From Blastocladiella emersonii ATCC 22665 (taxonomy: Eukaryota; Fungi; Blastocladiomycota), in NCBI GenBank assembly GCA_025594325.1, contig JANHCV010000003.1:372001-436000 (forward strand): a stretch of 64,000 nucleotides of DNA, given 5' to 3'. The position numbers and the translations under genes are program-made. Below the pieces are notes generated by a model, which was not told the origin of the DNA, made no database searches, and saw only the letters and a program-made list of their open reading frames with translations. This document shows positions 1,327 to 41,987 of this stretch, one piece after another. How positions within the stretch are numbered: position 1 is the first letter of the stretch; each line of letters begins with the position of its first letter.

Positions 1327-2418
1327 TTGCAACGCATCAACAAACCGCACCCAACTCGCGCAACGGCCATCACTACGCGCCGCTGCCGCTCGACCACCAC
1401 CACCACCACTACCAGCAGCACCTCCCACTCCACCATGCTCGACTTTGCTCTGACGACCGGCGAACCCGCCATCCTGCTGCCGACCGACGAGGTCCGCCTC
1501 GAGACATCGGAGGGAACGATCGTCACCACGACCGTTGCGGTGATCGGGCAGTCGGCGCTGCTCCACAACATGCTCTGCAGCATGCTACCCGCCGCCAAGG
1601 GGCTCGCGATCCCGCTGCCCAACGTGTCCGAGGCGGCGCTCGCGCGCGTGCTCGAGTGGCTACGCGCGCACATTGCCGACGACGGGTACACGGCGCCGCA
1701 CGAGTACCAGAGCCGCACCGAGATCATGGAGTCGCTGCGCAACGCGACCATCTCGGAGCGGGACGAGGCGCTGTTCGAGAAGCTGTCCGACGAGCAGATC
1801 ATCGACCTCGCGCTGGCGGCCGACTACCTCCAGATCCAACCACTCGTCAACCTCGTGTGCTTCGTCATTGCCCGCGAGCTGAGCGCGTGACGCGGCGAGC
1901 AGAAGCTCCGCGACCGGTTCGGCCTGCCCGACGACCTGTCCGAGGAGCGCAAGGCCGAGATCCGCGCCCGGTTCGGCCTGCTCGACCCCGTCGCCAGCAG
2001 CTGCTCGCCCCCGGACGCCGCCGTCAAGTTCTTCGACTTTGACCTGATTGCGTCGTATCGCGCTCGTGCGCATGCTCATGCTCAAACCCAAGCTCATGAT
2101 GACTGCGCCGAGTTCGCCGACTCGGACAGCTCGTGCTACTCGGGCGGCACGCTCTCGCTCGACGAGTCGGTTGAAGATGGTAGCGCGTGCGCGTCTGCGT
2201 CGGAGGGCGACGAGTACGACGGCTCGGAGGGCGACGAGTGCGCGTCCGAGTCGGAGGGTGGCGAGTACGACGAGTGGGAGGGTGGTGAGTGCGACGACGA
2301 CGCGGAGGGTGGTGAGTGCGACGACGACGTGGAGGGAGGCGAGTAAGACGACGACGACGACGACGTGGAGGGAGGCGAGTACGACGCCGACCTGGAAGGT
2401 GACGAGTGTGACAAGTGA
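1327..2418 (+). pseudogene. SKP1-like (POZ plus dimerisation domain) gene with acidic repeat tail and two in-frame stops
   Basis: VRLETSEGTIV, IPLPNVSEAALARVLEWL and LSDEQIIDLALAADYLQIQPLVNLVCFVIAREL match SKP1 motifs. The same frame continues past TGA 1888-1890 as RGEQKLRDRFGLPDDLSEERKAEIR (SKP1 C-terminal helices), then EGGE(C/Y)DDD repeats broken by TAA 2344-2346, ending at TGA 2416-2418. The real start may be ATG 1435. Confidence 0.85.
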
Positions 2419-3628
2419 GACTGGCCGGGCACCCATCAAAATACACTCCCGTTCATTGCATCGCTCCACCGACCGTCTGCGAGAATGGGATTGACGAGCG
2501 CAAGCGGGTTCCTCACGAGGACGATAGAGCAACAAAGTAGCAACGTGGGCGGCAGGTCGCTCGCCGCTGCCGAGCCATTCCGCGGGCAGCGCCGACCGAG
2601 ACCGCGTCGCGAGCTCAGAGGAGCCGGAAATCGGCCGGGCAAGCGGTCGAGACCGGCTCGGCGCTCGCGTCGAGGCGACCGAATCGCGCGAGGGCGGACG
2701 CGGCGTTCATGCGCACGCGGCGGGGCTGTCGCGCGCGTCAACCGGCGGGATGACATCACCGCGCGCCGCCGGAGGCGCGTCCGCACCGTCGTCGCCTTCT
2801 CCGTCGCCCTGCGCGGCGGCGGTGCGGTTCCAGCACAATCAGCGCATACGCACCACTCGCCGCAATGCATCGACACCCGCAAGACCGCCTCCAGCTCGCG
2901 CGACCGACGCCGGCCGGGCGGTGCCGGCGCGGCGACGCGGGGGACGCGGGCGACGCGGGCGAGGTCGGACGGGCGGGGCGCGTCGCCGGCCGCATCCGCG
3001 AGTCTGCTGCATGTCGATGGGGTCCGAGTAGCTTCCATTGCGGTAGCGGAGCGAGGGCGGGGAGCGAGGGAAGTGCGGGGGAGCGGCGGTGGGCGCCCGA
3101 TCGGCAACGCGTGGGAGCAGCGCCTCGCGCCCGCTGACCGCACCCTCCATCATCAGCCGCCCATCACTCGGTCGGTCACCATCGCGCTCGCTGGCCTGCC
3201 CTGCCTCGCCCCGCCTCGTACTTGTCCTCGTCCTCGTCCTCGTCCTGCCGAACCGATGGTCCCCGCGCCGGACCGAGCCCGCAGCTGACGGTGGTCGCCG
3301 ACTCGCCGACGCGTGCCCGTCCCCTTGCATCGAGTCGCTGTGCCGATTCATCGTCGAACTGCATCACCGTCGGCGCCCGTCGAGGGCGCGCGCGCGCGCT
3401 GCTGTTGCGCGCCGCCAGAGCGCTCGCCGGTCGCGGTGGGTGGCGTGACGGCAGCCGACGTCGCCCTCGCCGTGTCTCCCACCGATTCCGCTCCGCTTCC
3501 AGCACCTCGTACCGCCGCCCGCCTCGCCCGCCAAACCCACACGCGCGCGCGCCAAGTCTCCACCCGAACGTCTCGCACCGCGACGCGTCCGGCACGCGTC
3601 GCCGCGGCCCGCATCGCCTCCGACGGAC

Positions 3629-6600
3629 ATGATCCGGCCGCCGGCCATGATCGTGCACCACACCACACCACGGCGCGCCAGTGCCCGCAGGCGCTCGTGC
3701 TCTCGTCCCAAGTACGCCAAGGACCTGATCCGCCCGGTCCTCCATCATCGCGCAGCCGCTCGGCGACGCGACCCACGCCGTGTCCAGTTCACTAACTCGC
3801 ATTGCGTCGCCCTCGTTCTGCGTAGCGTCGTCGTCGTTATCTGGCACCAGTCCGGCCGGGTTTCGGCAGGGATACTCAGCGGCTGCCTCCGTGATCTCGG
3901 CGCGCCTGGTCTCAGCGACGACCGTCTGCATCATCGACATCATTATCAAGACGCTCAAGCTGTGCAAGAGGAGATGCACCAGTCGCTCAACAAGATGCTC
4001 AAGGGTACGCGTCTTCTCACGCGACGCTCGCCGCGGGCATGACTAACAAGCAGTCTCGCTTCGGCAGTCTGTACCGGCTACTCCAGATCGTGCCCCGCTC
4101 CTCGCTCTCGGTATCGCGACCTTCGTTGCTGCGGTCCTGCCGTGGTCGCGCCGGCCCCCGTCATGTTTGACTCGACTCGATCATCCTGGCCGCCATCATT
4201 ACCGCACCCGCACCATCACTCTGTCTACACCAAGCCCGCCTTCCACGACGACTCGAATGACGATCGCGAGACGATGCGCTTCGGTACGCTCACTCGACGC
4301 GTTCATGACCGCACGCGCCGCGCTCCCACTCACTCAGCCCAATTCGACGTGTAGTCCGCCACTCGACCACCTCCCGCGTCAAGTCGCCGCGCGTCAAGCT
4401 CGACATGACCGAGGCCGCCGCACTCCTGTGGTTCCGGTTCCGCACGCGCGGTTCCCGCTCGGCCACAACTACGAGAGAAGACGTGGCCCTGTCAGCTCGA
4501 CTGGTTCGCCGTCATCTTTTCGAGGGCAGGTCGACGACGTACGTGCCTCGGCCTGCCTCATTGACAAGACCCAGCCCGCGCACAAGGTCGACGACATGCT
4601 GCACCGCCGCGACGCGCCTCCGCGGCCTGTTCCAGCCCCGACGTTCCGCCCACGGTCGTGCCCGGCGGGCCCGAGTTCCTCGCGCACGCCGCGCGGCTCA
4701 TCATGGCCCGCACCGACAGCGGCCTGCTCGAGCCCGTCTCAACTTCACCGATGTGTTCGTGATCAAGTCGGTCCCCGTCACCATCCCGTTCGCCATCGCG
4801 GGCGGGCGCCGCGCCGTGGCCTCCGAGAAGCGCAAGCAGTACGCGCCGCTGTATGCGGCCACCGACCCAGACCACCAGTACCTGCCCAGCGGCAATTTCT
4901 GCAACGTCGCGCTCTACATATCGGCCTGCCGCACCACGTCGAGGCCGTCTTCGTCATCGCGGCCCTCATGCTGCTCCTCCCGGTACGTCGATCCCGCTCC
5001 TCGTTACCTACGCAACGTTCACTAACGCTCTGTCTCGCGTGCCTCACAGCGACGAGTTCGAGCGCACCGAAGCCAAGGTCAAGTAGTTGGGGCGCGGGTC
5101 GGAGTAACGGGTCTCGGTCTCGTCGTGCGCCAACTGCGGATCATGTACGCTTCCCTTGCCACACCGCTCCCGTGTTCAGTACACTGACTCGCATCGCGTC
5201 GTCGTCGTACCATAGCGTCGGCGGTATCTGGGACCGGTCCAGCCGGTTTTTGGAAGGGACGTTTCGGCGGCTGCAGCTCCGTGATCTCGGCGCGCCTGGT
5301 CTCAGCGACGATCGTCCGCATCGTCGACATCGTCATCAAGGCGCTCGGCGTGCACATCAAGGGCACCAGCAGCGGCGCGGCGCGGCGCGGCCAAGGCCCA
5401 GGAGTACGCTTTGTCGTGTTCGGTCCCCGCTTTTTGCCCAACTTACGGTATGTCTCACTTCTGTAGTCTGCGCGATCTGCGCCGCGCATTCGGCAACATT
5501 TGCATCAACCATGGTACTAGGCACGCGGCGCCGACGATCAACTACGGGTCCAGGTACGGCTCGTTTCACCGTTTCTCCCAGTTCGATACGAGCACGACTG
5601 ACATTTCCAAATCTCGCTCCCATAGTTTGCGGCAGCTCTTCGACGCCGCCAGCAACATGAACATTATGGACTAGCGACAGACACGCGCGCGTGTCGCCTC
5701 TGGGTACGGCACTTTTTCACTTGACTTCCGTGACTCAAGTGCGACTAACGTCGCACCCCTACTTTTACAGTTCGCGCGCCAGCGTCTCGGTCAAGGCGAC
5801 GAGGTCACGTACCACCAGCGCCAGCGTCTCCCGACCGCTCGCGGCGGGCCCAACGCGTGTGGTTCTCGGGTGGGCGGCGCAGATCACGCGGTGGATGGTC
5901 AAGTTCGAAGTTCGTGGCGAACGCCATGCCGTGCCCGTGTCCATCGGCCAGTGTGGGATCACGCCGCTTCGAGTCCTGATCCGGTGCAGCATCATCTCCT
6001 CCTCGCCCGCGGTCCAGTTCGCCGTGCTCACGGTCCTGCCCATCTCGTTTGTGCGTGGCCAATCTAGCTGCTCATGGTCACCATCGAGGCCGGTCGCACC
6101 CTCGCGCCGCTCATCGCCGCCAAGTTCATCGCGTTTCCACATGCTGATCAAGGCGTCGTCGCTCTCCAAGCTCGGCGAGGGCCATTCTGCCGCCTGTCGT
6201 TGCTGCGCTGTCGCTCATTGTTTTCATTCAACTCGGCCGTCCTTTATCGCCACTGTTCCTGCTCCTACCACGCCACGCGCTACGTGAGGTCCGCCATCAA
6301 CGACTCGCACCACGACCGCTGCGAGATGCGCTTCGGTACGTCTTTGCGACGCGTCGCGTCCGCCACCCGATGTACCGCCGCTCACTCACCCCGATTCGAC
6401 GTCTAGTCTTTGGTCCGGCCATCCTCCCGACGTCGCCGCCCACCACGACCCGCGTGTCAAGTTCAACGTGACCGAGGAACATGCCCATCAGGTTCCGGTA
6501 TGACGTGGGGTACCCGTTCGGCTGCATCGGCACGACCCGGCCCGCGTACGATGCTGTCAACGTGTTGCACGGCCCGTATCACGGTACGTTTCCCCATCGC

Positions 6601-7500
6601 CGCATTAATCCCGCCGAGGCCTGATCACTGATCCACATCGCTTCTTCCCAAATCGTAGCGTCGTCGCCATCGGACCAGTTTTGGCCGGGCCCCGCTGGTG
6701 ATACCCGGCGGCGTATCCGTGCTCATGGCGCGCGTCTCGCCTCGGCGACGATCGTTGTGTGCACCACCTTCGATACGCTTGACGTGTACATCAAGGGCAG
6801 CGCCAGCAGCTCGGGCAAGGCCGAGGGGTACGCGATGTCTCGCTCAAGCTCCACAACAACATGAGCAGGACTAACGCCCTCGCTTTCCCGCTCAGTACAC
6901 CCTCAACCCAACTTCTCAACGTCGCCGGCAACATGAACGCCACGGGCAGCAACAACTATGCGTTTATGAATCATGGGTACGGTTCGTCGTGCTCGCGCTT
7001 TCCAATGAAGACTACTAACGCTCTCCTGCCTCTATCCCACAGTTCGCACCAGCTGCTCGCTCGAATCAACGAGACCATGTCCCGCGAGCGCCTCGGTCAT
7101 TCGCGCAGCGGGCTCAACGCGCAGGCAGTCCTCGCGAGGAGCGAGGACGGCTCAAGCCGCGCGGTCGCTCGCCAAGTTCATGACGGCCGCTGCCGTGCTC
7201 GGGCTCATTGGCGAGTGCGAGGCCGCGGCAGTCCGGGTTCTGCCATTCCGGTACATCATCTCGCTCGCGGTCCAGTTCACCATGCACCTGGTCCTGTTCA
7301 TCAAGGACGTGGTTCGGCTGATCGAGGTCATTGTCAAGGCCATGCGCATCCTCGCGCCGCTCATTGCCAAGGTCATCGCGTTCCGCACGTCGTCGTTGCC
7401 CTCGGAGCTCGGCGAGGTCCACTCGGCCGCGGCCGCCGCCAACGGAGCCAAGATCATGGTCTCGGTACTCGGCGAGGAGGTGCAGCAGCTCGAGTCCCCA
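3629..7500 (+). pseudogene. Intron-rich gene or gene array of unknown family built from three diverged ~1.4-kb units
   Basis: CCGTGATCTCGGCGCGCCTGGTCTCAGCGACGA at ~3889 and ~5279, diverged at ~6717. GATGCGCTTCG|GTACG..TTCGACGT.TAG intron at ~4280 and ~6330. Helical block VQF..L..I..A.R.LAPLIA at ~6010-6190 and ~7270-7430. Several GTACG..ACTAAC..AG introns; frames are broken. Confidence 0.55.
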
Positions 7501-8656
7501 AGTTCGCCGCCATCAACGCGGCGTAGCAGCGACGGCTCATTGACGACTACGCGCGCGCGCGCGCCGCGCGGGTTCGCGTACACGGCCGTGCAGTCTGGCA
7601 TTGCCGCGGACGAGTGGTGGTACGAGGCCGACAAGTCGGAGGGAAGCAACTACAACAACGCAGGCTCGGTCGACGACGGTCATCCTGCAGTCGCGCGAGG
7701 TCCGGCCAGGTTCGAGTACCGAGTGCCCGCGCGCGAGTACGGCACCTCGGACCGGACCCAGCCCTCGCCGTCACCACACCAACTGCACCTTCCACCCGAG
7801 CGACGGCAAATAACCACCGTACGTCGCGGCCCACGACCGCTGACCCGACCTTGCATCCATCCTCGCAACTCCCTGTCCCTGCAGCTGGCGCCTCGTGTCT
7901 CGCTCGCTCCGATTGCTCACCGAATTGGCCTGTCGGTGCCCGTTGTGGTGCCATCTTCTCTTTCTCTGAGGGCCCGCGGACGCGTACGCGTCCACGGACC
8001 TGTGGACGGGAATTGAAGCGGTCATGGTGTGCATGAAGAGCAGGCGTGAAACTTGTGCAATCGGACGCAGGTTCGGCGGCATACGCGCGAGGCTGGACGC
8101 TTGGCGCATCGCGGTCGGTGCTGGTCCGGACCGTGACGCGCACGCTCGGCTGGTCGCAGCAGTCCGACACGCTGGCGTCGCATCGGTCGCCGAGTTCAGC
8201 TATCTGCGCTCCTCCTCGTGGCCGTCGTCGTCATCCGCTCCTCCCTCGTTGCTCCACAGTGTCGCGGTCGGCGGCACCGGCGCTGCGGCCCTCGCAACAA
8301 ACGATGGCAGGGGCGCGGTCATTTGGCGACCGAGACGACGCGCGCGAGCGAGCGATCAATTTCCTTTGTTTTTGTTCTTCATATTGTTGATGGATGGCCC
8401 ACTTTCTGTATCATTCGCGAAGTTGTGGTCGAGTGGTCTGGGCTGGCGTCTGCTGCAAGAGTTGAGCCCTGTTCCGCGGCGCAGCCTGCGATTATTATCC
8501 CTTGGAGACAGACAGTTCGGTCCGCAAGCACGACCTCATGTGAGCTCAGATAATATTATTCAGCGCGTGTATGCGTTACAACAATCGACGGCTCGCGGGT
8601 TTCTCGCGCGCGAGCTTGGTCGCAGCGAGGACTTCGACCTCGTCACAGCGGGAATT

Positions 8657-8683
8657 CTCAGCTGTAGCTTTAGCGAAGCTGAG
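8657..8683. other. Short hairpin exactly at the arm/spacer junction
   Basis: CTCAGCT (8657-8663) and AGCTGAG (8677-8683) form a perfect 7-bp stem with a 13-nt loop, starting at the first unpaired base. Confidence 0.7.
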
Positions 8684-8944
8684 TTTCTGTTTGAGCAATT
8701 GAAACCTATCAGAGACATCAACCTGCACGTGAACCAAGCTTCGTCTGCAGTTCTAGCCCCCGACCCCACTCTCTTGGTCTAGCTCTCATTCCAAGTCCCC
8801 GACTCCCCGCATTGGCCTCAGCTCTGTGTAATAAAAATTCTGACACTGCTTATTTGACGAGGCGACCTACTTGAAAGTCCTCAAATGTGCGTCAACCTGG
8901 AGTGACAGTGGAGCGGTCGGTCGGTGCTGTCTCCCACTGCTGCG

Positions 8945-8973
8945 CCACCCGCTGAGCCACCCGCTGAGCCACC
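8945..8973. repeat. 12-bp tandem repeat CCACCCGCTGAG x2.4
   Basis: Read directly from the sequence. Confidence 0.85.
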
Positions 8974-9085
8974 GCCCTCAATGTGCCTGATGATCAATAC
9001 ATTTTGTTCCTCCCTATATCTTTCTCGTGGACCCTGAGCGAAGCTGGAGCGTGAGCTGACGAACCTATATTGAATTTTTCCTGGG

Positions 9086-9261
9086 CGTTTTGAAGGCGAT
9101 AACAGCGTTTATAGCCTTTAAAAGCGTGCGCAGCCTTCAAAGGCGGGGGAGTGCTTTTGAAGGCGGGGGAGTGCTTTTGAAAGCTGGTGGGTGACTTTAA
9201 CGGCCGGACATGGCTTTTGAAAGCACCGCTTGCCTGCGGTGCCTTAATCGCCTTCAAAACG
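9086..9261. repeat. Array of quasi-palindromic GC(C/T)TT(T/C)(G/A)AA(A/G)GC motifs bounded by a 15-bp inverted repeat
   Basis: CGTTTTGAAGGCGAT 9086-9100 is the reverse complement of ATCGCCTTCAAAACG 9247-9261. Internal copies at ~9114, 9133, 9153, 9173, 9213. Perfect 20-bp tandem AGGCGGGGGAGTGCTTTTGA at 9141-9180. Confidence 0.85.
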
Positions 9262-10329
9262 ACCAAAAAAAATCGTGATGAAGCTTGCTGTTCCACGCCG
9301 TCAGCCTGTGAAAGAATTTCGTCTGACGTTGCAAAAAGTTAGGGTCTAGTTTCATTCGTTTTGCATGTAGGTTGGTCAGGTCAGCGGGAGAACAGGAGCA
9401 AGCGCTTAGTCCCGAAACGAGGCAAACGCCGGCGCCCTGGGTGATGCCAATCATGTGAGGCGGTCGCAAATGAGGGGCGCGTCCCCGCCAAGGATGCCCT
9501 CAACTGCTGCTCTCTACAACATCTATGTGTAACGTGGCTCCATACGATAGAAGTTGTGGGAGGCTAGCGCTGCGCAACACCATTCGTGCCAAGATCGCTG
9601 TGACGAGTCGCGGCAGATGATTGAAGGTTCGGCGAACCTCAAGCAATTGGTAAAGATTTAAGTGACAAGCAACACTATGTGCGAGCCGCGATCAAGTCTG
9701 TTGGCATCGACTAGTCGCGCCCGTCAACTACGCCACGAGTAGCTCACCGGATACGCCAAGTCGCGGCGACAAGGGCCGCGCCGTCGCCCATCACGTCGAC
9801 TCGCGCACGACGCGCTCAAGTTCGCGCGGTAAGGTTCTTCCTATTATCGTTCTCGACGCGATTCGCGCTGCGTGGAGGCGCCGCCGAGCTTCAAGTTCCC
9901 GCGCAAATTTGCTCGTGCCGTCGGCCTGGATCGCAGCGACGCAGCGCACGCTCTCGCGTCGACTGTACTCTTCCTCGCCTGACCATTTGCTCACTCGTCT
10001 CCGCCACGTCGCCCACAGCCTCGGTCACCCTCGACAAACTGCTCTCCCCCATCGACTGGCCGGCGCTGCCCTCGAGCTCGTACTCGGCCGCGTAAACGTT
10101 CATGGTCAAGGTACGAAACTCGCCCACGCCCAGCACGGTCTCCGACTTACGCCGATGATTCTCTCCTGTGTAGTACATTGCGGGCACCGTCACAATCCAA
10201 TGGTCGTGGTCGATGGCGCCGAGTGAACCAGCTGCGGGTGCAAGGACGGGTTTAAGAATCACCCAAGGCGTGTTGTCTCAGTGCTGACTGACTTTGCGCT
10301 CACAATGATCTCTCCTCCGCATCGCAAGC

Positions 10330-11026
10330 TGCTTCAGAACTCGTCAATGCCTCGCAGTTCCTTGCCCGACACGAGCTGGCAGCGACGCTCGCAGCGACGC
10401 TGGGGTCATGCGGCGACGAACAGCGCGTCCCGCTTGCGTTCTAGAAGCTGATTCCTCACGGTGTGCTTGCTGGCATCAAGGACTCGAGCTGGATCGCAGA
10501 CATGCACGTCAAGCACCGGCGCAAATCGTTTGATCAACGGTCCTCGCAGTTGCGAAGGAGCTCCGACGTGTTGCGCCGCTTGTTGCACAAGCCGCTTGAA
10601 ATTCCCGCTGTGACGAGGTCGAAGTCCTCGCTGCGACCAAGCTCGCGCGCGAGAAACCCGCGAGCCGTCGATTGTTGTAACGCATACACGCGCTGAATAA
10701 TATTATCTGAGCTCACATGAGGTCGTGCTTGCGGACCGAACTGTCTGTCTCCAAGGGATAATAATCGCAGGCTGCGCCGCGGAACAGGGCTCAACTCTTG
10801 CAGCAGACGCCAGCCCAGACCACTCGACCACAACTTCGCGAATGATACAGAAAGTGGGCCATCCATCAACAATATGAAGAACAAAAACAAAGGAAATTGA
10901 TCGCTCGCTCGCGCGCGTCGTCTCGGTCGCCAAATGACCGCGCCCCTGCCATCGTTTGTTGCGAGGGCCGCAGCGCCGGTGCCGCCGACCGCGACACTGT
11001 GGAGCAACGAGGGAGGAGCGGATGAC
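10330..11026 (-). pseudogene. Decayed LRR-like gene remnant crossing from the right arm into the spacer
   Basis: Translations LRLLSLGD, SELLRNCED and ARNCEALT (DNA repeat CCTCGCAGTT at ~10350 and ~10542) resemble Cys-containing LRRs; many stops. Confidence 0.3.
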
Positions 11027-11755
11027 GACGACGGCCACGAGGAGGAGCGCAGATAGCTGAACTCGGCGACCGATGCGACGCCAGCGTGTCGGACTGCTGC
11101 GACCAGCCGAGCGTGCGCGTCACGGTCCGGACCAGCACCGACCGCGATGCGCCAAGCGTCCAGCCTCGCGCGTATGCCGCCGAACCTGCGTCCGATTGCA
11201 CAAGTTTCACGCCTGCTCTTCATGCACACCATGACCGCTTCAATTCCCGTCCACAGGTCCGTGGACGCGTACGCGTCCGCGGGCCCTCAGAGAAAGAGAA
11301 GATGGCACCACAACGGGCACCGACAGGCCAATTCGGTGAGCAATCGGAGCGAGCGAGACACGAGGCGCCAGCTGCAGGGACAGGGAGTTGCGAGGATGGA
11401 TGCAAGGTCGGGTCAGCGGTCGTGGGCCGCGACGTACGGTGGTTATTTGCCGTCGCTCGGGTGGAAGGTGCAGTTGGTGTGGTGACGGCGAGGGCTGGGT
11501 CCGGTCCGAGGTGCCGTACTCGCGCGCGGGCACTCGGTACTCGAACCTGGCCGGACCTCGCGCGACTGCAGGATGACCGTCGTCGACCGAGCCTGCGTTG
11601 TTGTAGTTGCTTCCCTCCGACTTGTCGGCCTCGTACCACCACTCGTCCGCGGCAATGCCAGACTGCACGGCCGTGTACGCGAACCCGCGCGGCGCGCGCG
11701 CGCGCGTAGTCGTCAATGAGCCGTCGCTGCTACGCCGCGTTGATGGCGGCGAACT

Positions 11756-14700
11756 TGGGGACTCGAGCTGCTGCACCTCCTCGCCGAGTACCGAGACCAT
11801 GATCTTGGCTCCGTTGGCGGCGGCCGCGGCCGAGTGGACCTCGCCGAGCTCCGAGGGCAACGACGACGTGCGGAACGCGATGACCTTGGCAATGAGCGGC
11901 GCGAGGATGCGCATGGCCTTGACAATGACCTCGATCAGCCGAACCACGTCCTTGATGAACAGGACCAGGTGCATGGTGAACTGGACCGCGAGCGAGATGA
12001 TGTACCGGAATGGCAGAACCCGGACTGCCGCGGCCTCGCACTCGCCAATGAGCCCGAGCACGGCAGCGGCCGTCATGAACTTGGCGAGCGACCGCGCGGC
12101 TTGAGCCGTCCTCGCTCCTCGCGAGGACTGCCTGCGCGTTGAGCCCGCTGCGCGAATGACCGAGGCGCTCGCGGGACATGGTCTCGTTGATTCGAGCGAG
12201 CAGCTGGTGCGAACTGTGGGATAGAGGCAGGAGAGCGTTAGTAGTCTTCATTGGAAAGCGCGAGCACGACGAACCGTACCCATGATTCATAAACGCATAG
12301 TTGTTGCTGCCCGTGGCGTTCATGTTGCCGGCGACGTTGAGAAGTTGGGTTGAGGGTGTACTGAGCGGGAAAGCGAGGGCGTTAGTCCTGCTCATGTTGT
12401 TGTGGAGCTTGAGCGAGACATCGCGTACCCCTCGGCCTTGCCCGAGCTGCTGGCGCTGCCCTTGATGTACACGTCAAGCGTATCGAAGGTGGTGCACACA
12501 ACGATCGTCGCCGAGGCGAGACGCGCGCCATGAGCACGGATACGCCGCCGGGTATCACCAGCGGGGCCCGGCCAAAACTGGTCCGATGGCGACGACGCTA
12601 CGATTTGGGAAGAAGCGATGTGGATCAGTGATCAGGCCTCGGCGGGATTAATGCGGCGATGGGGAAACGTACCGTGATACGGGCCGTGCAACACGTTGAC
12701 AGCATCGTACGCGGGCCGGGTCGTGCCGATGCAGCCGAACGGGTACCCCACGTCATACCGGAACCTGATGGGCATGTTCCTCGGTCACGTTGAACTTGAC
12801 ACGCGGGTCGTGGTGGGCGGCGACGTCGGGAGGATGGCCGGACCAAAGACTAGACGTCGAATCGGGGTGAGTGAGCGGCGGTACATCGGGTGGCGGACGC
12901 GACGCGTCGCAAAGACGTACCGAAGCGCATCTCGCAGCGGTCGTGGTGCGAGTCGTTGATGGCGGACCTCACGTAGCGCGTGGCGTGGTAGGAGCAGGAA
13001 CAGTGGCGATAAAGGACGGCCGAGTTGAATGAAAACAATGAGCGACAGCGCAGCAACGACAGGCGGCAGAATGGCCCTCGCCGAGCTTGGAGAGCGACGA
13101 CGCCTTGATCAGCATGTGGAAACGCGATGAACTTGGCGGCGATGAGCGGCGCGAGGGTGCGACCGGCCTCGATGGTGACCATGAGCAGCTAGATTGGCCA
13201 CGCACAAACGAGATGGGCAGGACCGTGAGCACGGCGAACTGGACCGCGGGCGAGGAGGAGATGATGCTGCACCGGATCAGGACTCGAAGCGGCGTGATCC
13301 CACACTGGCCGATGGACACGGGCACGGCATGGCGTTCGCCACGAACTTCGAACTTGACCATCCACCGCGTGATCTGCGCCGCCCACCCGAGAACCACACG
13401 CGTTGGGCCCGCCGCGAGCGGTCGGGAGACGCTGGCGCTGGTGGTACGTGACCTCGTCGCCTTGACCGAGACGCTGGCGCGCGAACTGTAAAAGTAGGGG
13501 TGCGACGTTAGTCGCACTTGAGTCACGGAAGTCAAGTGAAAAAGTGCCGTACCCAGAGGCGACACGCGCGCGTGTCTGTCGCTAGTCCATAATGTTCATG
13601 TTGCTGGCGGCGTCGAAGAGCTGCCGCAAACTATGGGAGCGAGATTTGGAAATGTCAGTCGTGCTCGTATCGAACTGGGAGAAACGGTGAAACGAGCCGT
13701 ACCTGGACCCGTAGTTGATCGTCGGCGCCGCGTGCCTAGTACCATGGTTGATGCAAATGTTGCCGAATGCGCGGCGCAGATCGCGCAGACTACAGAAGTG
13801 AGACATACCGTAAGTTGGGCAAAAAGCGGGGACCGAACACGACAAAGCGTACTCCTGGGCCTTGGCCGCGCCGCGCCGCGCCGCTGCTGGTGCCCTTGAT
13901 GTGCACGCCGAGCGCCTTGATGACGATGTCGACGATGCGGACGATCGTCGCTGAGACCAGGCGCGCCGAGATCACGGAGCTGCAGCCGCCGAAACGTCCC
14001 TTCCAAAAACCGGCTGGACCGGTCCCAGATACCGCCGACGCTATGGTACGACGACGACGCGATGCGAGTCAGTGTACTGAACACGGGAGCGGTGTGGCAA
14101 GGGAAGCGTACATGATCCGCAGTTGGCGCACGACGAGACCGAGACCCGTTACTCCGACCCGCGCCCCAACTACTTGACCTTGGCTTCGGTGCGCTCGAAC
14201 TCGTCGCTGTGAGGCACGCGAGACAGAGCGTTAGTGAACGTTGCGTAGGTAACGAGGAGCGGGATCGACGTACCGGGAGGAGCAGCATGAGGGCCGCGAT
14301 GACGAAGACGGCCTCGACGTGGTGCGGCAGGCCGATATGTAGAGCGCGACGTTGCAGAAATTGCCGCTGGGCAGGTACTGGTGGTCTGGGTCGGTGGCCG
14401 CATACAGCGGCGCGTACTGCTTGCGCTTCTCGGAGGCCACGGCGCGGCGCCCGCCCGCGATGGCGAACGGGATGGTGACGGGGACCGACTTGATCACGAA
14501 CACATCGGTGAAGTTGAGACGGGCTCGAGCAGGCCGCTGTCGGTGCGGGCCATGATGAGCCGCGCGGCGTGCGCGAGGAACTCGGGCCCGCCGGGCACGA
14601 CCGTGGGCGGAACGTCGGGGCTGGAACAGGCCGCGGAGGCGCGTCGCGGCGGTGCAGCATGTCGTCGACCTTGTGCGCGGGCTGGGTCTTGTCAATGAGG

Positions 14701-21482: not shown

Positions 21483-21575
21483 CACGACGATGCCCTCCTC
21501 TCCTTCCACTTTCAAGTCATTCTGCAGACGACGACGACAACGGATGCCGCGAGCTCAACATCATCATCGTCGTCA

Positions 21576-27621: not shown

Positions 27622-27960
27622 TGCGGGCGTGCTCGTTCGTGAGGGGAGGAGGCCAGCAGAACCCGCGGCTCACCGTGGGAACCCGTTCCGCTGAAACGCC
27701 ACCCGCGCGTGCGTGGCGCAACGCGGCCGCGAACCTGAAACACGACGCGTGCGCTTCACCGGTAAGCGCATAAATGAATTGCGAAGAAGAAAAGTATGCA
27801 AAAATGTCGATTTTTCCTTGCGCGTTTCTCTCGTGTGTCTTGCTTTCCCGCCTCTTCCCGCCTTCACCTTCCTCTTCCCGTTCCCCTCCTCCCCCCGGCG
27901 GCCATGTGTTATTCACCGACGCTACCAGACAATGCCCCACTGTGCCCGCAGGCGTCAACG

Positions 27961-28058
27961 TGGAATGGCCGGGATTCGAACCCAGAGTTCCATGGGTGGG
28001 ACCATCTCATCCACGCGGTGGTCCGTGCTGGCGCAGGCCGCTCCGCCAGCACAGGACC
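27961..28058 (-). pseudogene. tRNA-like remnant (T-arm and acceptor 3' half, A-box-like motif, GC hairpin)
   Basis: Minus strand CTGGG-TTCGAAT-CCCGG-CCATTCC-A (27985-27961) is a T-arm plus acceptor strand. TGGCGGAGCGG at 28048-28038 is A-box-like. No complementary 5' acceptor strand found, so not a complete tRNA. Confidence 0.35.
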
Positions 28059-28899
28059 TAGACGAGGCAGCTGACGTGGCCAAAGTACCCTCTAGACAAC
28101 GTTCGGTTGCTTTACACCGCCCCGCACGCCGCCGCAGTGGGGCGGCCGACTCAGCAAGCTGCCTTCTCGTAACTCTCGTGACCGACCGTTTCAATGCCAC
28201 TCGATTCCCTACACATGATCGAACCACAACCTTCGTCGCACAGGTTCGATCATGTACGGGCTGGTCTCGAGCCGGGTCAGCCGTGGATCGAGAGTGGGGA
28301 CAGCGATAGGAGCCTCGGAGGGCGCCGGTTTGAGTGACACGACCCACAGAATACTACCAGCGAGTGCAAGTCGATGAATCTCTAACGAGTGGGACCTCGT
28401 TGCAAGCATCGTCGTGCAACAAGAATGCGGGTGTTGAAAGCGGGGATTTTAGACGGAAGCAGCCAAGAGACACTCCCCAAACCGGAACACTGAAGTTATG
28501 TTGCATGTTCGGTGGGCGCGGTACATCCGCGGGCTCGAGTTTGTGTCCATGTCCATTCCTCATTGACTTTGCTTGAGCGCAAGTTCGACCGATTTCCAGG
28601 TGGCCCAACGTCGCTTAACCCAAGGTCGTTGGTTTCGGTGTTCGACTGGCGGGGGAAGCACGCGGGCGGACGCACGAAACGTGAGGGCCACGAGGGCTTC
28701 CATGGAAGCGAGTCTAAGCCGTGGAGTTGCGGGAGATTAATGCCGGGGAAACAGGCATGTTTAGAAGCGTGGACGAGAACGAGCGTTTCGAGCGCCCCAG
28801 TATCCTAGCCGCGTCGTTGTCGTTCACGGCCGAGTCGCGGGAGTTCGAACGATTGGTTCAGAATTGCCAGGTTGCCTCCCGGTCTCCTTATAGTCTGTT

Positions 28900-30900
28900 T
28901 AGTGGCGTGGAATAGTAGCAGTGTCGACGGTTGGAATCAGCAACTTCGAGGTGTGGATCTCGTCAAAGGTCGGGGCTGTGCAGTATAGTCAGCTCGCGGC
29001 GACCATAAAAGCAAGCACTCGGAGCTTGGAACCTGAGAGTGCCCACGAAATGAATTTCGTTGCAGTGTGGCGAGCTCGCTGTCAACGACAAAGCAGCTGC
29101 AGTGGCGGTCGTCGAGTCGGCGAATCGGCCGAGCTGCGACTCATGGCCGACATGCAGTCCGAAATCGCCGTGTCCATTCGTTGCATAGAGTTTTTTTTTG
29201 TGCGTAAGTGCGCTACATGAGGTTGGTGCAGGAGCGGAAGCGCGACGCTGAGAGTCGTGAAGGCGGCTGGAGGCGTGGCGGCGCCCACCACGTGCGCTTG
29301 TGCGACGCGAACATCGCGTTCGAGTCTGCAACTGGCAAAACGATCAACCCTTTCCTCATTTCCGCAACATGGGCCTTGATGTGAATGCGTGACGCTACCC
29401 GCCATGCTCCCCTCCACTTTATGTGACTATTTAACCATTTGGGTCTCTGGAGTCGTCCTTGGGGGATCGATCCGGAGTTCCGCAAGGGGGGAATGCAGAA
29501 CTTGCACGTACGCGCCCAGCGGAGGTGGAGGCCAATTCACCAACGCCCGGCGTTGCCTAGGCTTGGAAGCTGACAGATATGAACAGCTACCGGTTGACTG
29601 GTACGTTGGCGGGGCACCTGTGTAGGCGCGGTACATCTCGCCACCGGGGGTTCTGCACCAGCTCCGAGCGGAAACGTTTGTCAGGACGACGGCAGACCGG
29701 AACTGTGTCGTAATACAGCAGCACCACATCGAGTATCGGCGTGAAAGTTGTGATACATTCTATATTCCCCCAGCACATGCGATCCCATACGACAAATAGT
29801 CTAAAGGTGACAAGCGGATCGTTGTTCGTACGCGAGAACGACATGCGACGTCAAGCAAAAGTAGTCCTGAAGAGAGTTCGGATCCCGCGGCTAAGCACAG
29901 CTCGAGGAGCGTCAAGAGTACCCGCAGGGACTACGCGAGCGGCGCGGGAAGCTTTTCACGACGCCCGCGCAGCCGCTGCGCTTACAAGGGAGGCTTCCCG
30001 GTTGTCTTGATCTGATCCTTGTCCTCGACGGGGGTTGAAATGGAAGTCAAGCCGCTGTGGTGGTGAAGGAGAAACCAAAATCGCCGTGGACGAACTCGAG
30101 TCCACGGGAGCCAACGTCGCTGACGCGGTTGGCACCGTCAGATACAAGCTGGCGTCTGACGCCGATCCGCTGCGCCACTAAACGCAAGCTGTACACGGAC
30201 ACCTTGGACAGATTCACGTCAATCCGCTCCAGGACGCGATGTGCGCGTCCGAGCTCGCTTGTTGAAAGTTGCAGCTCATAGTTCGACGGTAGCGCAATCT
30301 GAATGCGGACTTGAGGCGCAGAACGGATCGCAGCGCTCTCCTTATAGCCAAGAATGGAGACCCAGATTGACTCTTCCTGGTCCGAGATCTGCTCTTGGCG
30401 TTCAGGATTGGGACATTCCCGCAGATATACCTTGGGTGTCGGTCCTAAGCATGGCTCCTCGAACGCGCCGACCAAATCATGGAGCGAGGCATTGGAAATT
30501 TGCATGCGAAGTGGTATTTTTGTGCTCCGAGAGCCTTGGGATAGGCATGGGCACAACCGGGGGCGTTGCACAAGCGAGTCGGGTTCGGCAGCAAGTTTAC
30601 CGGAGCAAGTTGGCCCGTTCGTAAATTCAGCATGGTCTCCATTCGTTGCATCAAGTCTGGTGGTCATTCTAGGGTTGCGTCGTAGGGCCATGAGGGAGAA
30701 GGGGTCGTTCAGCGCCAAGGGCGGGAGCTCGGTCGCGGGCTCGGTGCGCCACACCACGGCGGGCCTCACGTGCGCCTGTCCACCGCGTCCGCGCTCTGTG
30801 CTGAGTGCCGTGCGAGTACGCCAGGGGTGCAAGGTTGCTCATGCGATGGAGAACGGGCTCGACTATTGTCCGGCCGTGCTGCAATGCCCACTGCTCGGGT
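28900..30900 (-). pseudogene. Two tandem decayed LRR-like (possibly F-box/LRR) gene remnants
   Basis: Fragments YLRECPNPER, LHRCPANV, LAELRIDP, FRSCTNLM*, LSGSKLRVLAF in shifting frames. Shared module CATTCGTTGCAT at 29175 and 30640. Confidence 0.4.
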
Positions 30901-31081: not shown

Positions 31082-31700
31082 TTAGAAAGGCCCGTTGTTG
31101 AAGCCGAACTCGTTGCGGTCGTTGAAGCGGTACTCGCCCTCGTCAAAGATCCACTCGTCGTCGGCGAACCCGTATTTGCTGCCGCCGTCCATGGGGTCAA
31201 ACCCGAACGGGGCCTTCTTGCCGTCCCGGAACGCGTCCGTCCGCATCTCGCATCTCGTACATGAAGAGCTTGTGCATCTTGGCGGCGATCCGGTCCGTGG
31301 CGCGGTCCGCATCGGTCTCGCGCGCAAAGTAGCGGGACATGAGGTTGGAGAGCGGCGGGATCGCGAGGAGGTCGGCGGCACGGCGCAGCTCGACGCGCAC
31401 GTCCCGCGACAGGAGCGTCGTGAGCATTCATGCGTCCCACTCCGAGATCGGCGTGCCGGGCTCGGGGACGAACGACGGCTCGTCAATGTGGAAGCCGAGC
31501 CACTCGAGGATGAAGTCGAGCGTCACCTCGGAGATGGACGGCAGGACGACCTCGATCTTGACGCCCTTGGCGATGCACGCGGCGGCCGCGTCCTCGATGA
31601 AGGCCGACTTGGAAATGACGGCGAGCGTCGTGACGACCGTCTTCCCGTCGGACGTGTTCGATTACTCTTGTCGTCTCCCCTCTGAATGGGATGCTCCAAG
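31082..31700 (-). pseudogene. SKP1-like pseudogene (two stops, 7-bp duplication frameshift) with Phe/Gly/Asp-rich tail
   Basis: TSDGKTVVTTLAVISKSAFI..LPSISEVTLDFILEWL..ISEWDA*..ELRRAADLLAIPPL. CATCTCG is duplicated at 31244-31257. Confidence 0.85.
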
Positions 31701-35011: not shown

Positions 35012-35626
35012 TTAGATGAAGGACGGGCGGGTGTCCGGACGGCGGATCCGGGCCGGAACTGGCGCCCCGCTCGGGCGGGTCATACCAGGAACGCCGACCT
35101 GGCGCAGCTGGTCACGGATAGCCTGCTTGGTGGTACTGGCGCGGAGCTCGCGCCCGAGCAGCTTGGCCGCGAGGTAGTGGAGCGGCATCACCTGCATGTA
35201 GCCCGCCGCCTGGAACAGCTGGACGCGCTGCGCCGGTGTCGGGATGCGCGCGTAGAAGGCGAGGTCCCACTGCGAAACGATCTTGCGGCGCTCGGTCTCG
35301 TACACCTCGAACTCGTGCACGTCGGCGGGCGGCTCCACGTACGCCTCGTGGGCGTGGTACTCGAGCCACTCGAGGATACGGTCGAGCGTCGCCTTGGTGA
35401 TGGTCGGCAGCGGGAGCTCCGAAATCCCGGCGCCGCCCGCCGTCTCACCGTTGTCCGAGGCCGCCGCGGAGGGCGAGGCGGGCGCTGCGGGCACGGTAAA
35501 GTACGACTTGACGAGGCCCGACTTGTACATGGCGGCGAGCGTCGTCTTGACCTCGTAGTCGTCGGACGTCTTGAGAGTAACCACCACCTGGTCGGCGGCG
35601 ATCGAGGCGGCAGCGGTCGCAAACAT
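35012..35626 (-). CDS. SKP1-like protein (intact, ~204 aa)
   Basis: VTLKTSDDYEV..SGLVK..LPLPTITKATLDRILEWLEYH..SQWDLAF..LFQAAGYMQVMPL. No introns or stops. Confidence 0.85.
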   Translation of the reverse strand: MFATAAASIAADQVVVTLKTSDDYEVKTTLAAMYKSGLVKSYFTVPAAPASPSAAASDNGETAGGAGISELPLPTITKATLDRILEWLEYHAHEAYVEPPADVHEFEVYETERRKIVSQWDLAFYARIPTPAQRVQLFQAAGYMQVMPLHYLAAKLLGRELRASTTKQAIRDQLRQVGVPGMTRPSGAPVPARIRRPDTRPSFI

Positions 35627-40398: not shown

Positions 40399-40860
40399 TC
40401 AAAAGGGCCTGTTGTCGACGCCGAACACGTCGCAGTGCTGCAGGCGGAGCACTCGGAGCTCGCCCTCCTTGAAGCAGAAGGGCTCCTTGTCGTCGTCGAA
40501 GACAAACTCGCCGTAGTCGAAGCCGATCGTACCGCTGCCACTGGCCCGCTGCGCCTCAAAACGCATGCTGTACGCGTGCAGCCGCTCGAGCTTCTTGGCG
40601 ATGCGGTCCACGTTGCGGTGCTCGTTGACTCTGCGCGCAAAGATGCTGATCATGAGATCCGACAGCGGCAGGATCTTGAGGTAGTCGGCGGCGTTGAGCA
40701 GGTCCACGCGCTCGGGTTGCAGCGGGATGCGCGCGATCAGGTCCTCGTCCCACTCCGAGATGGGTGTGCCGCGTTCGGGGACGAGCGACGGCTCGTCGAT
40801 GTGGTGCACGAGCCACTCGATGACGTGGTGGAGTGTCGGTCGGCAGGTCGACCTCGGCGA
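40399..40860 (-). pseudogene. 5'-truncated SKP1-like pseudogene, paralog of 31082-31700
   Basis: EVDLPT/TLHHVIEWLVHHIDEPSLVPERGTPISEWD..VDLLNAADYLKILPLSDLM..RPF. N-terminus absent; small internal deletion with frameshift. Confidence 0.85.
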
Positions 40861-41369
40861 AGCGGCGACGTTGGCGGTCTCGCTTGCACGGCGCCGGGAT
40901 CGGTGCGAAGCGACTCGTGACGGTGATGAGATTTACGTTGGTGCGTGTTTCGGCGATGGTTGCAGGAACCGCCCGCGGTGGAGATGGGGTCACGGCAAGT
41001 GGCAACGTCCAGCGCGAGCGCGATGCTGCCAGCTCGCTTACATGTCGATCGGAGGCACCCGTGCAACAAGTTGCGTTCGACCGAACGATAGGGGATGGAT
41101 CGAGGGTTGAGCGCGGCGCCGCCGCTACAAAAAGGGCGACTTGGCGTCCAACGTTCGCGTTAGCGATGCGGCTCGCGAACGCGTCGGGCGGGAAACGGGT
41201 CACTCACTCCCGCGCACAAACGCCTCAAGCAGACCACGATGGAGAGCGACAGTGTTTATGCAGGGTGGAACGCAAGGCGAGAGGGATGGGGCGGGGGTGG
41301 GGTGAGGTGAGGTCGAAGGTCGCAGGTGCTCCTCAACGACTGTCCACTGGCCACCACCGTCCGCTCAAA

Positions 41370-41987
41370 TCAGACAAATCTCGGAACGCAGCCCGATCTG
41401 CGCTCTTCGCTGCTATCGCCAGGGCGCGGAGCGTAGATGAAGGACGGCCGGGCGCCCGGGCGGCGAGTCCGCTGCGGCGGGGCCCGCGCCGCGCTCGGGC
41501 GGACCTGGCCAGGAACACCGAGCTGCTCGAGCCGGTTGCGGATGTCCTGCTCGCTGCAGCCAGCAGCAAGGGAGCGGCCGAGGATCTTGCACGTGAGGTA
41601 GTACAGCGGCATAATTTGCAAGAATTTGGCGGCGGTGAGCAGCTCGATGCGGTGCACCACGTCCGGGATGCGCGCGAAGAAGGCGAGGTCCCGACCCGTC
41701 ACGGGCGTGCGGCGCTCGGCCTCGATCACCTCGAACTTGTCCGCGTCGGCGGGCGGCGGGTAGTACGGCTCGTCGATGTGGTGCATGAGCCACTCGATGA
41801 CATGGTCGAGCGTGGCCTTGGAGATGGTCGGCAGGTCGACCTCGACCTCGACGCCCTTGGCGGTGCAGGCGGCCGCTGCGTTCATGACGAAGGCCGACTT
41901 GTTCACGACGGCGAGCGTTGTGACGACGACTTGGCCGTCGGACGTCTTGAGGAACACCTCGCGGTCGGTGGCAGCGGTGACGGACAT
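41370..41987 (-). CDS. SKP1-like protein (intact), paralog of 35012-35626
   Basis: EVFLKTSDGQVV..KSAFV..LPTISKATLDHVIEWL..ELLTAAKFLQIMPLYYLTCKIL. The position of the paralog's stop (SFI-TAA) is TAC here (41433-41435), giving a 21-aa extension. Confidence 0.87.
   Translation of the reverse strand: MSVTAATDREVFLKTSDGQVVVTTLAVVNKSAFVMNAAAACTAKGVEVEVDLPTISKATLDHVIEWLMHHIDEPYYPPPADADKFEVIEAERRTPVTGRDLAFFARIPDVVHRIELLTAAKFLQIMPLYYLTCKILGRSLAAGCSEQDIRNRLEQLGVPGQVRPSAARAPPQRTRRPGARPSFIYAPRPGDSSEERRSGCVPRFV

What the first reader, a model, noticed from the sequence alone, without database searches (positions are those of the whole stretch)
1327..41987. Birth-and-death island of SCF/ubiquitin-ligase parts: 6-7 SKP1-like genes interleaved with F-box-like, LRR-like and RING genes
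Seen: SKP1-like loci at 1327, 16838, 31082, 35012, 40399, 41370 and possibly 36897; two intact, four broken, all intronless and mutually very divergent. Between them lie an F-box-like gene, at least five LRR-like remnants and a RING gene, and the island ends abruptly at the conserved block (42.5 kb). Knowledge: fungi usually have one conserved SKP1; large SKP1/F-box expansions are known from nematodes and plants and are linked to host-pathogen conflict. Inference: a candidate undescribed clustered, fast-evolving SCF-based defence, non-self-recognition or effector system.
Basis: partly seen in the sequence, partly recalled or inferred. Interest (0 to 1): 0.82.

Follow-up and report, generated by a model that had tools for sequence, protein, structure and literature searches.

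The report
Decaying cluster of extra SKP1 genes

Summary
The window is Blastocladiella emersonii ATCC 22665, contig JANHCV010000003.1. The SKP1-like loci are real. There are seven in the window, six of them distinct, and an eighth lies 11 kb upstream.

- **Copies:** two are one gene mirrored in a palindrome whose arms run 19.6 kb and are virtually identical. Nothing SKP1-like lies at 36897.
- **Origin:** the copies form one clade nested beside this species' own canonical SKP1 (support 100/98). No closer relative appeared among 1.84 billion representative proteins.
- **State:** only B and C in the window are intact. Both keep the SKP1 fold through helix 7 but replace the last F-box-gripping helix with a disordered tail.
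- **Copy A:** it keeps that helix, but behind an in-frame TGA at a conserved cysteine codon.
- **Copies D, E, G:** these are pseudogenes.
- **Selection:** B and C diverge about as fast as their non-coding flank, so constraint is weak.
- **Neighbours:** no F-box or LRR was found in about 34 ORFs or ORF segments. One neighbour has a RING-like finger.

Best reading: local duplication, paralogue recombination and decay of SKP1 copies, not a demonstrated SCF toolkit. The scan had already noted this locus in an overlapping window of the same genome.

The parts
1435..1887 (+). SKP1-like copy A: 151-codon ORF covering the POZ domain plus helices H5-H6. It is the paralogue closest to the canonical SKP1 (45% identity).
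   Evidence: Pfam Skp1_POZ E 3.8e-7, above the cut-off. Human SKP1 E 6e-9, residues 3-126. Tree.
1888..2343 (+). In-frame TGA (1888-1890) at the position of a conserved Cys codon, followed by an H7/H8-like stretch and an acidic repeat tail that is still open and coding-like.
   Evidence: Sequence. The canonical tail matches 1897-1986 at E 1e-8. The stop aligns with the canonical Cys. GC3 0.83. The mirror copy's TGA is confirmed by a run X3 contig with no differences.
16913..17821 (-). Copy A': exact mirror image of A, including the TGA at 17366-17368.
   Evidence: 100% inverted repeat. tblastn.
1..8656 (.). Left palindrome arm as seen in the window. It continues 10.9 kb upstream of the window.
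   Evidence: the repeat finder I1. L001:10435-20585 equals window 30197-20047.
8657..10599 (.). Unique 1.94-kb spacer at the palindrome centre.
10600..30197 (.). Right palindrome arm, 19.6 kb. It is identical to the left arm over the 18.8 kb that could be compared, except for 4 mismatches in its outermost 21 nt. About 0.8 kb of the left arm was not fetched.
19188..22961 (+). No domain was recognised.
   Evidence: ORFs and GC3 0.84-0.89. Intron signals. Gene model. No Pfam, PDB or atlas match. AF2 pLDDT 42.
23175..28216 (-). Gene with a RING-like finger (C3HC4 spacing at residues 744-806 of the long ORF). It has no other recognised domain.
   Evidence: zf-RING_5 E 8.8e-4, below the cut-off. Cys/His spacing read. 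No PDB relative. Gene model.
30050..30622 (-). Copy G: a strongly degenerate SKP1-like relic. The palindrome's outer boundary (30197) lies inside it.
   Evidence: P0002 matches it by tblastn at E 2e-32, though about a quarter of that alignment is the tail shared with P0002. E matches it at E 0.006. It keeps 4 of 21 conserved SKP1 columns. GC 0.55.
31197..31661 (-). Copy D: a pseudogene with no start codon, an internal stop and a frameshifted tail.
   Evidence: The annotators' model needs introns to skip the breaks.
35012..35626 (-). Copy C: intact 204-aa SKP1-like ORF with an Arg/Pro-rich tail in place of helix H8.
   Evidence: Skp1_POZ E 4.5e-3.
40399..40833 (-). Copy E: only the C-terminal half is in frame. 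The N-terminal half, up to about 41000, is frameshifted and shortened.
   Evidence: The annotators fused it to B as P0001.
41370..41987 (-). Copy B: intact 205-aa SKP1-like ORF. The predicted SKP1 fold covers residues 10-155, and residues 160-205 form a disordered Arg/Pro-rich tail.
   Evidence: Skp1_POZ E 3.4e-4. AF2 pLDDT 84. The 50 Foldseek matches listed are all SKP1 chains.
42536..43405 (-). Border gene: a 289-aa LPMO-like protein (AA9 plus CBM_19, weak matches). A near-identical inverted copy lies at the other end of the island.

Best explanation
The island is a species-restricted family of duplicates of Blastocladiella emersonii's own SKP1 gene. It was built and reshuffled by local tandem and inverted segmental duplication and by recombination between the paralogues. 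Most copies are now decaying.

Shown:
- All copies descend from the canonical B. emersonii SKP1 lineage and evolve many times faster than it.
- The region from one LPMO-like border gene to the other (about 57 kb) is an imperfect palindrome with virtually identical 19.6-kb inner arms.
- The outer arm boundary lies inside SKP1-like coding sequence, and the upstream copy P0002 is a B/E/G mosaic.
- D, E and G are pseudogenes, and A carries a nonsense codon.

Inferred:
- A tandem array of B-type, E-type and G-type copies was duplicated as a block and then inverted.
- Unequal recombination between paralogues deleted about 11 kb from the left half.
- A's TGA is a recent one-base change from a Cys codon.

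B and C are at most weakly constrained. If made, they would be SKP1-fold proteins that keep the cullin-facing POZ core and helices H5-H7 but lack the last F-box-clamping helix. They would then be poor general F-box adaptors. They could act as specialised or competing cullin binders, or do nothing. There is no evidence that the neighbouring genes are SCF parts.
For: Origin and restriction to this species:
- Careful maximum-likelihood tree: the paralogues are monophyletic (99/86) and join the B. emersonii canonical SKP1 (100/98). Catenaria and B. britannica SKP1 fall outside. The canonical branch is 0.13 against 0.2-1.0 for the paralogues.
- A full HMMER scan of 1.84 billion representatives ranks only this locus's proteins and the canonical B. 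emersonii SKP1 (1.5e-39) above generic SKP1s of unrelated taxa, which start at 7e-26.

Rearrangement:
- Palindrome structure.
- Mosaic make-up of P0002.
- Shared downstream flanks between the copy blocks.

Decay:
- Stops and frameshifts in D, E and G.
- A's TGA, present in a contig of a separate run from the same sample.

Weak constraint on B and C:
- Divergence by codon position is 0.33/0.28/0.28.
- Coding identity is 74%, against 76% and 69% in the two 300-nt stretches downstream.

Loss of the F-box-binding end:
- PF01466 is found in the canonical SKP1 (9e-16) but in no paralogue.
- An H7/H8-like tail is found only behind A's stop.
- The AF2 model of B ends its helices at residue 155.

Neighbours: no F-box or LRR.
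Against: Signs that B and C are still under some selection:
- Both ORFs are open, of equal length, and share a tail. Simulated neutral substitution alone keeps such a frame open in only 2-4% of trials, before counting indels.
- B-C identity is higher at columns conserved in canonical SKP1s (0.59 against 0.48, p 0.011). D and G show no such excess.
- B keeps strong codon periodicity (GC3 0.83 against GC2 0.50) and gives a confident SKP1 fold.

Limits of the evidence:
- No RNA run was listed, so expression is unknown.
- Short, divergent F-boxes are often missed by Pfam.
- The last homology search for the orphan gene was swamped by its poly-Asp run.
- Only annotated proteins of this genome were searched, so unannotated copies elsewhere in it cannot be excluded.
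Confidence: 0.6

Rival explanations
1. B and C, and perhaps A through UGA read-through, are working SKP1-derived adaptors under diversifying selection. Their new C-terminal tails would recruit new partners or block CUL1, and the palindrome would keep them by gene conversion, as with amplified gene families in sex-chromosome palindromes.
For: - The ORFs are intact and of equal length, and share a tail. The chance of staying open under neutral substitution is 0.02-0.04.
- Conservation is enriched at structural columns (p 0.011).
- The SKP1 fold is predicted with confidence.
- A's stop is UGA followed by C, and the 151 codons behind it are still open and coding-like.
- The arms are virtually identical over 19.6 kb.
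Against: - Divergence is equal at all codon positions and no lower than in the downstream flank.
- Near-invariant SKP1 residues are lost. The Asn of the AANYL motif is replaced in every copy, and the Trp of the WD motif in A and B.
- B and C lie outside the identical arms.
- Half of the family is broken.
- No expression data were available.
Confidence: 0.28
2. One reading: a co-evolving SCF toolkit of SKP1-like, F-box, LRR and RING genes that serves defence, non-self recognition or effector functions.
For: - A and the 1225-aa gene are arranged head-to-head, 1.37 kb apart.
- That gene's N-terminus has a 'PPELMQHLVGL' stretch and three predicted short helices.
- Language-model features point weakly to ankyrin proteins, including plant SKIP35, at score 0.79-0.80, which is below the level that counts.
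- A RING-like finger lies nearby.
Against: - No F-box family appears even at E 10.
- No LRR by Pfam or by pattern.
- No PDB relative.
- The AF2 model has pLDDT 42.
- The intact SKP1-likes lack the F-box-binding end.
- The only copy that keeps that end is cut by a stop.
Confidence: 0.05
3. Part of the picture is an assembly artefact. The 19.6-kb identical arms are longer than the mean 10.5-kb HiFi read, so the second arm, and with it copy A', may not exist.
For: - The arms are identical apart from 4 mismatches at the edge.
- The mean read is 10.5 kb.
- The short contigs I could lay down do not span the arms.
Against: - A unique 1.94-kb spacer and two different outer flanks each need their own arm.
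- Coverage works out at roughly 186-fold HiFi, from the 6.37 Gb and 34.27 Mb given in the genome paper.
- Fold-back artefacts rarely have a long unique spacer (my own knowledge).
- The SKP1 family remains real either way.
Confidence: 0.1

Closest known systems
Canonical SKP1 (SCF adaptor; Pfam PF03931 + PF01466), including B. emersonii's own copy on contig JANHCV010000001.1
   Same: The fold is the same: the BTB/POZ core plus helices H5-H7. The copies descend directly from the species' own SKP1, and copy A still aligns to it through H8.
   Different: The paralogues lack a detectable PF01466 domain. H8 is replaced by a disordered Arg/Pro-rich tail (B, C) or a Phe/Asp-rich tail (D, E). Near-invariant residues are lost, branches are up to about 8 times longer than the canonical one, and several copies are broken.
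Lineage-specific SKP1 families of plants and nematodes, such as the Arabidopsis ASK family, described as showing adaptive and degenerative evolution (PMC6463862, title and abstract only). That C. elegans skr genes and ASK20/21 have altered C-termini is my own recollection.
   Same: There are many local duplicates of SKP1 with very uneven rates, pseudogenes and members with altered C-termini.
   Different: This family is in a fungus, where I know of no reported expansion (my own knowledge). It is confined to one palindromic locus. No matching F-box expansion was seen in the window, and no member has been shown to be expressed.
Large near-identical palindromes carrying amplified gene families, as on mammalian sex chromosomes (my own knowledge)
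   Same: The arms are tens of kb long and essentially identical, with a unique spacer. They carry duplicated, fast-evolving genes, and the breakpoints lie within paralogous sequence.
   Different: Gene conversion between the arms is not shown here. The intact copies B and C lie outside the identical arms.

Membership tests
SKP1 family | N-terminal BTB/POZ domain of the Skp1 type (PF03931) | tested here: met
   A scores 30.6 bits and P0002 23.9 bits, both above the 21.9 cut-off. B scores 21.2 and C 17.6, just below it. The AF2 model of B has pLDDT above 90 over residues 10-140, and the 50 Foldseek PDB matches listed are all SKP1 chains.
SKP1 family | C-terminal Skp1 domain (PF01466: helices that grip the F-box, including H7-H8) | tested here: not met
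   The canonical B. emersonii SKP1 scores 8.7e-16. No match for B, C, P0002, E or G. For A the match lies only behind the in-frame TGA, at E 0.15. The tblastn search with the canonical tail finds only A. H5-H7 are still modelled in B, but H8 is absent.
SKP1 family | Descent from SKP1 rather than from Elongin C or a generic BTB protein | tested here: met
   The copies nest with the species' canonical SKP1 at 100/98 support. The PDB sequence and fold matches are SKP1, not Elongin C.
SKP1 family | Binds CUL1 and F-box proteins | not testable with these tools
   Indirect only. The near-invariant Asn of the AANYL motif is replaced in all copies. From memory, this Asn faces CUL1.
SCF gene island (SKP1 with F-box/LRR and RING neighbours) | A neighbour carries an F-box | tested here: not met
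   No F-box family for the 1225-aa gene or its N-terminal 100 or 300 residues, even at E 10. No PDB relative. The AF2 model is too poor to judge.
SCF gene island (SKP1 with F-box/LRR and RING neighbours) | Neighbours carry leucine-rich repeats | tested here: not met
   No LRR family in the 20 ORFs scanned between the copies at E up to 1. The LRR core pattern occurs 14 times in six frames of 64 kb and never twice in register.
SCF gene island (SKP1 with F-box/LRR and RING neighbours) | A RING gene related to SCF function | tested here: inconclusive
   C3HC4 spacing is present, but zf-RING_5 scores 19.6 bits against a cut-off of 27.9. Nothing links the gene to SCF.
Birth-and-death multigene family | Repeated local duplication, with intact, diverged and pseudogenised members side by side | tested here: met
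   Eight loci lie within about 57 kb. They share flanks, one is a mosaic copy, and three are pseudogenes.

The most novel reading that the evidence does not exclude
B and C, and A by UGA read-through, are expressed SKP1-derived proteins that have swapped the F-box clamp for new tails. They would form a private, rapidly diversifying cullin-adaptor or cullin-blocking system in a zoosporic fungus, renewed by recombination in a palindrome and perhaps driven by genetic conflict.
Probability: 0.15. Interest if true: 0.7.

Novelty: new member of a known kind. Interest (0 to 1): 0.4.

Why it matters
To my knowledge fungi keep a single, slowly evolving SKP1. A private burst of SKP1 copies in an early-branching fungus shows that the birth-and-death pattern known from plants and nematodes can arise there too. 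It also offers natural SKP1 variants that lack the last F-box-clamping helix.

The locus is a clear case of paralogue-mediated rearrangement: a 57-kb imperfect palindrome whose breakpoint sits inside a gene copy.

It is also a warning for users of this annotation. Several models here splice across stop codons or fuse neighbouring genes. If the copies prove silent, the finding is ordinary genomic decay.

Tried and rejected
- **RNA evidence:** no RNA run was listed for a housekeeping gene of the window, so expression and the disputed introns could not be tested.
- **Laid runs:** X1 and X2 gave only pieces of 22-28 nt. Only X3 and X4 were usable.
- **Homology search for the 755-aa ORF:** it returned nothing, not even its own annotated protein, probably because the poly-Asp run filled the candidate list. 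It is uninformative.
- **AF2 of that ORF without an alignment:** pLDDT 42, so I ran no fold search on it.
- **Atlas look-ups:** the 755-aa ORF and the ORF at 7180-8013 gave only sub-threshold leads.
- **dN/dS:** the counting methods give about 0.75-1.1, while the likelihood method gives about 0.3 for every pair among copies B-E, pseudogene pairs included. Extreme GC3 bias makes both unreliable, and YN00 mostly failed. I relied on per-position distances, flank comparison and a conserved-column test instead.
- **RIP-like mutation of copy G:** rejected. Transitions are only 47% of changes, with a general drift to AT.
- **Retroposition as the origin of the intronless copies:** rejected as an argument, because the canonical gene is intronless too.
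- **Hidden H8 exon downstream of B, C, D or E:** none found.
- **Annotators' 45-nt 'intron' that removes A's TGA:** rejected as unlikely. It is GC-rich, has no CTAAC branch site and deletes conserved helix H6. The credible 96-nt intron at 21421-21516 looks quite different.
Full report
**Where the window comes from.** A protein search with one SKP1-like ORF returned proteins of Blastocladiella emersonii ATCC 22665. Look-ups by exact protein placed the window on contig JANHCV010000003.1 of GCA_025594325.1, with record position = window position + 372000. The genome paper says the assembly was made from PacBio HiFi reads (mean 10.5 kb), polished with Illumina reads, and annotated with ab initio gene predictors in funannotate. 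Its text does not mention RNA-seq (PMC9730499).

**Checking the observation.**
- tblastn with the first SKP1-like ORF, and later with all copies, finds these loci:
  - A at 1435-1887(+)
  - its exact mirror A' at 17369-17821(-)
  - D at 31197-31661(-)
  - C at 35012-35626(-)
  - E at 40399-40833(-)
  - B at 41370-41987(-)
  - an unlisted degenerate copy G at 30050-30622(-)
- Nothing SKP1-like lies near 36897.
- Pfam gives Skp1_POZ for A (3.8e-7), B (3.4e-4) and C (4.5e-3).
- A matches human SKP1 over residues 3-126 at E 6e-9.
- A and A' are one gene seen twice, because window 1-8656 is the perfect reverse complement of 10600-19255.

**State of each copy.**
- B (205 aa) and C (204 aa) are intact and start with ATG.
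- A stops at a TGA (1888-1890). The same frame then continues with RGEQKLRDRFGLPDDLSEERKAEIRARFGLL, which matches the canonical H7-H8 region (E 1e-8), followed by an acidic repeat. The stop aligns with a Cys that is conserved in the canonical B. emersonii and Catenaria proteins and in B, so one base change from a Cys codon explains it.
- A contig of run X3, from the same sample, covers the mirror copy's TGA and the stop at 21453 with no differences.
- D has no start codon, an internal stop and a frameshifted tail.
- E keeps only its C-terminal half in frame.
- G keeps 4 of 21 conserved SKP1 columns and has drifted to 55% GC.
- The public annotation hides these defects. P0001 splices B to E. 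P0003 removes A's TGA with a 45-nt GC-rich 'intron' that deletes helix H6. P0004 bridges D's breaks.

**Origin of the family.**
- A profile of A, B, C and the upstream copy P0002 was scored against 1.84 billion representative proteins, giving 1755 hits at E<=0.001.
- Only this locus's proteins and one further B. emersonii protein (P0006, 1.5e-39) stand above generic SKP1s of unrelated taxa, which start at about 7e-26.
- The last 183 residues of P0006 are the canonical SKP1 of the species (Skp1_POZ 5e-14, Skp1 PF01466 9e-16). In the annotation they are wrongly fused to a DHHC gene on another contig. That gene is intronless too.
- A careful maximum-likelihood tree makes the paralogues one clade (99/86) and joins it to the B. 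emersonii canonical SKP1 (100/98). The internal order is A, then (B,C) and (D,P0002). Catenaria and B. britannica SKP1 fall outside.
- The canonical branch is 0.13, against 0.2-1.0 for the paralogues. The family therefore arose in this lineage and evolves much faster than its parent.

**Structure and lost parts.**
- AlphaFold2 with an 83-sequence alignment gives B a mean pLDDT of 84. The model is near-certain from residue 10 to 140, has helices up to residue 155 (the H7 equivalent) and a disordered tail over 160-205.
- The 50 Foldseek matches listed, out of 94 at E<=0.001, are all SKP1 chains.
- No paralogue matches PF01466.
- B and C share an Arg/Pro-rich tail. D and E share a Phe/Asp-rich tail.
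- Several near-invariant residues are changed. The Asn of AANYL is replaced in all copies, and the Trp of the WD motif in A and B.

**Are B and C under selection?**
- Divergence between them is equal at the three codon positions (0.33/0.28/0.28).
- Their coding identity (74%) is no higher than that of the 300 nt downstream (76%). The next 300 nt are 69% identical, and upstream sequence is unrelated.
- Against pure neutrality:
  - Substitution alone would leave such a frame open in only 2-4% of simulations.
  - Their identity is higher at columns conserved among canonical SKP1s (0.59 against 0.48, p 0.011). This excess is absent for D and G.
- dN/dS estimates disagree between methods under this extreme GC3 bias.
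- I read this as weak or recently relaxed constraint. I put the chance that B and C are working genes at roughly 0.3-0.4.

**Architecture of the island.**
- The DNA upstream of the window (L001) shows that the palindrome arm is 19.6 kb. L001:10435-20585 equals window 30197-20047 apart from 4 mismatches, all within the outermost 21 nt.
- Outside the arms, L001:8158-10223 matches window 43830-41765 in inverted orientation at 98.4%. This segment includes a 289-aa LPMO-like gene (AA9 2e-4, CBM_19 9e-4).
- The whole stretch from record 358782 to 415830 is therefore an imperfect palindrome, and its right half holds about 11 kb more than its left.
- The upstream copy P0002 (H9P43_002959) is a mosaic. 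Its start is B-like, codons 48-155 are E-like (94.7%) and its tail is G-like.
- The arm boundary falls at homologous positions of E-type and G-type coding sequence.
- Downstream flanks shared between B-E and C, and between E and D-G, point to a duplicated block of tandem copies.
- Recombination between paralogues is the simplest explanation. This step is inferred, not shown.
- I could not check the palindrome with long reads.

**The neighbours.**
- The 'F-box-like' gene is a 1225-aa orphan (19188-22961) with a credible 96-nt intron at 21421-21516, which has a GTACAG donor, two CTAAC sites and an AG acceptor.
- It has no Pfam match, including F-box families at E up to 10 on its N-terminal 100 and 300 residues.
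- It has no PDB relative. Language-model similarity to ankyrin and SKIP35 clusters is only sub-threshold (0.79-0.80). The AF2 model has pLDDT 42.
- Twenty further ORFs between the copies gave no LRR or F-box match at E up to 1.
- A scan for the LRR core pattern found 14 scattered hits in six frames of the whole window and no pair in register.
- The RING gene (23175-28216, minus strand) has C3HC4 spacing but a sub-threshold Pfam score and no PDB relative.
- Ab initio models in the two identical arms differ from each other, which shows how soft these models are.

**Verdict.** The cluster of SKP1-derived genes is real, private to this species in present data, and a textbook case of birth and death by local duplication and recombination. 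The count needs correcting: one gene was counted twice, one locus is absent, and two were missed. The surrounding 'SCF parts' are not supported, and a defence or recognition role has no evidence behind it. Comparable SKP1 families are known from plants and nematodes (PMC6463862; otherwise my own knowledge), so this is a new member of a known kind. Its interest is moderate and would rise if B, C or read-through A prove to be expressed and to bind CUL1.

Noticed in passing
window 1-30197, and L001:10435-20585: The palindrome arms are 19.6 kb long and identical wherever they could be compared, except for 4 mismatches in the outermost 21 nt. The spacer is 1.94 kb. The arms are longer than the mean HiFi read, so the structure deserves a check against long reads.
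   Followed up: partly
L003:8001-10567 (contig JANHCV010000001.1): KAI9188851.1 is named 'eukaryotic peptide chain release factor GTP-binding subunit'. It is really a DHHC palmitoyltransferase model fused to the species' canonical, intronless SKP1.
   Followed up: partly
window 40399-41987, 1435-2346 and 31082-32422: The public gene models splice across stop codons or fuse neighbouring copies: H9P43_002973 joins B and E, H9P43_002967 skips A's TGA, and H9P43_002970 bridges D's breaks. Models also differ between the two identical arms (922 vs 1036, 1225 vs 1200, 251 vs 250 and 242 vs 264 aa).
   Followed up: yes
window 42536-43405(-), and L001:8583-9452: A 289-aa gene with very high GC3 (0.97) and weak AA9/LPMO and CBM_19 matches is duplicated in inverted orientation at both borders of the island, within a segment 98.4% identical.
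   Followed up: partly
window 23175-26891(-): The long ORF with the RING-like finger also holds a tandem peptide repeat (SPARSKGTTTSA-like units, about residues 880-930). It has no detectable SNF2 or helicase domain by Pfam or PDB sequence search.
   Followed up: partly
window 57472-59793(-): A PIF1-like helicase ORF (PF05970, 3.6e-23) lies in a lower-GC stretch.
   Followed up: no
window 19143: A contig of run X4 reads G where the assembly has A. The site lies inside the palindrome, just upstream of the 1225-aa gene's start codon. It may be a difference between the arms or between alleles that polishing hid.
   Followed up: no
window 3778-3956 vs 5170-5346, and 5908-6193 vs 7174-7430: Diverged direct repeats (81% and 66% identity) lie in the unexplained 2.4-8.6 kb part of the arm. 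Only 7201-7650 shows clear codon periodicity. The ORFs there match no known family.
   Followed up: partly
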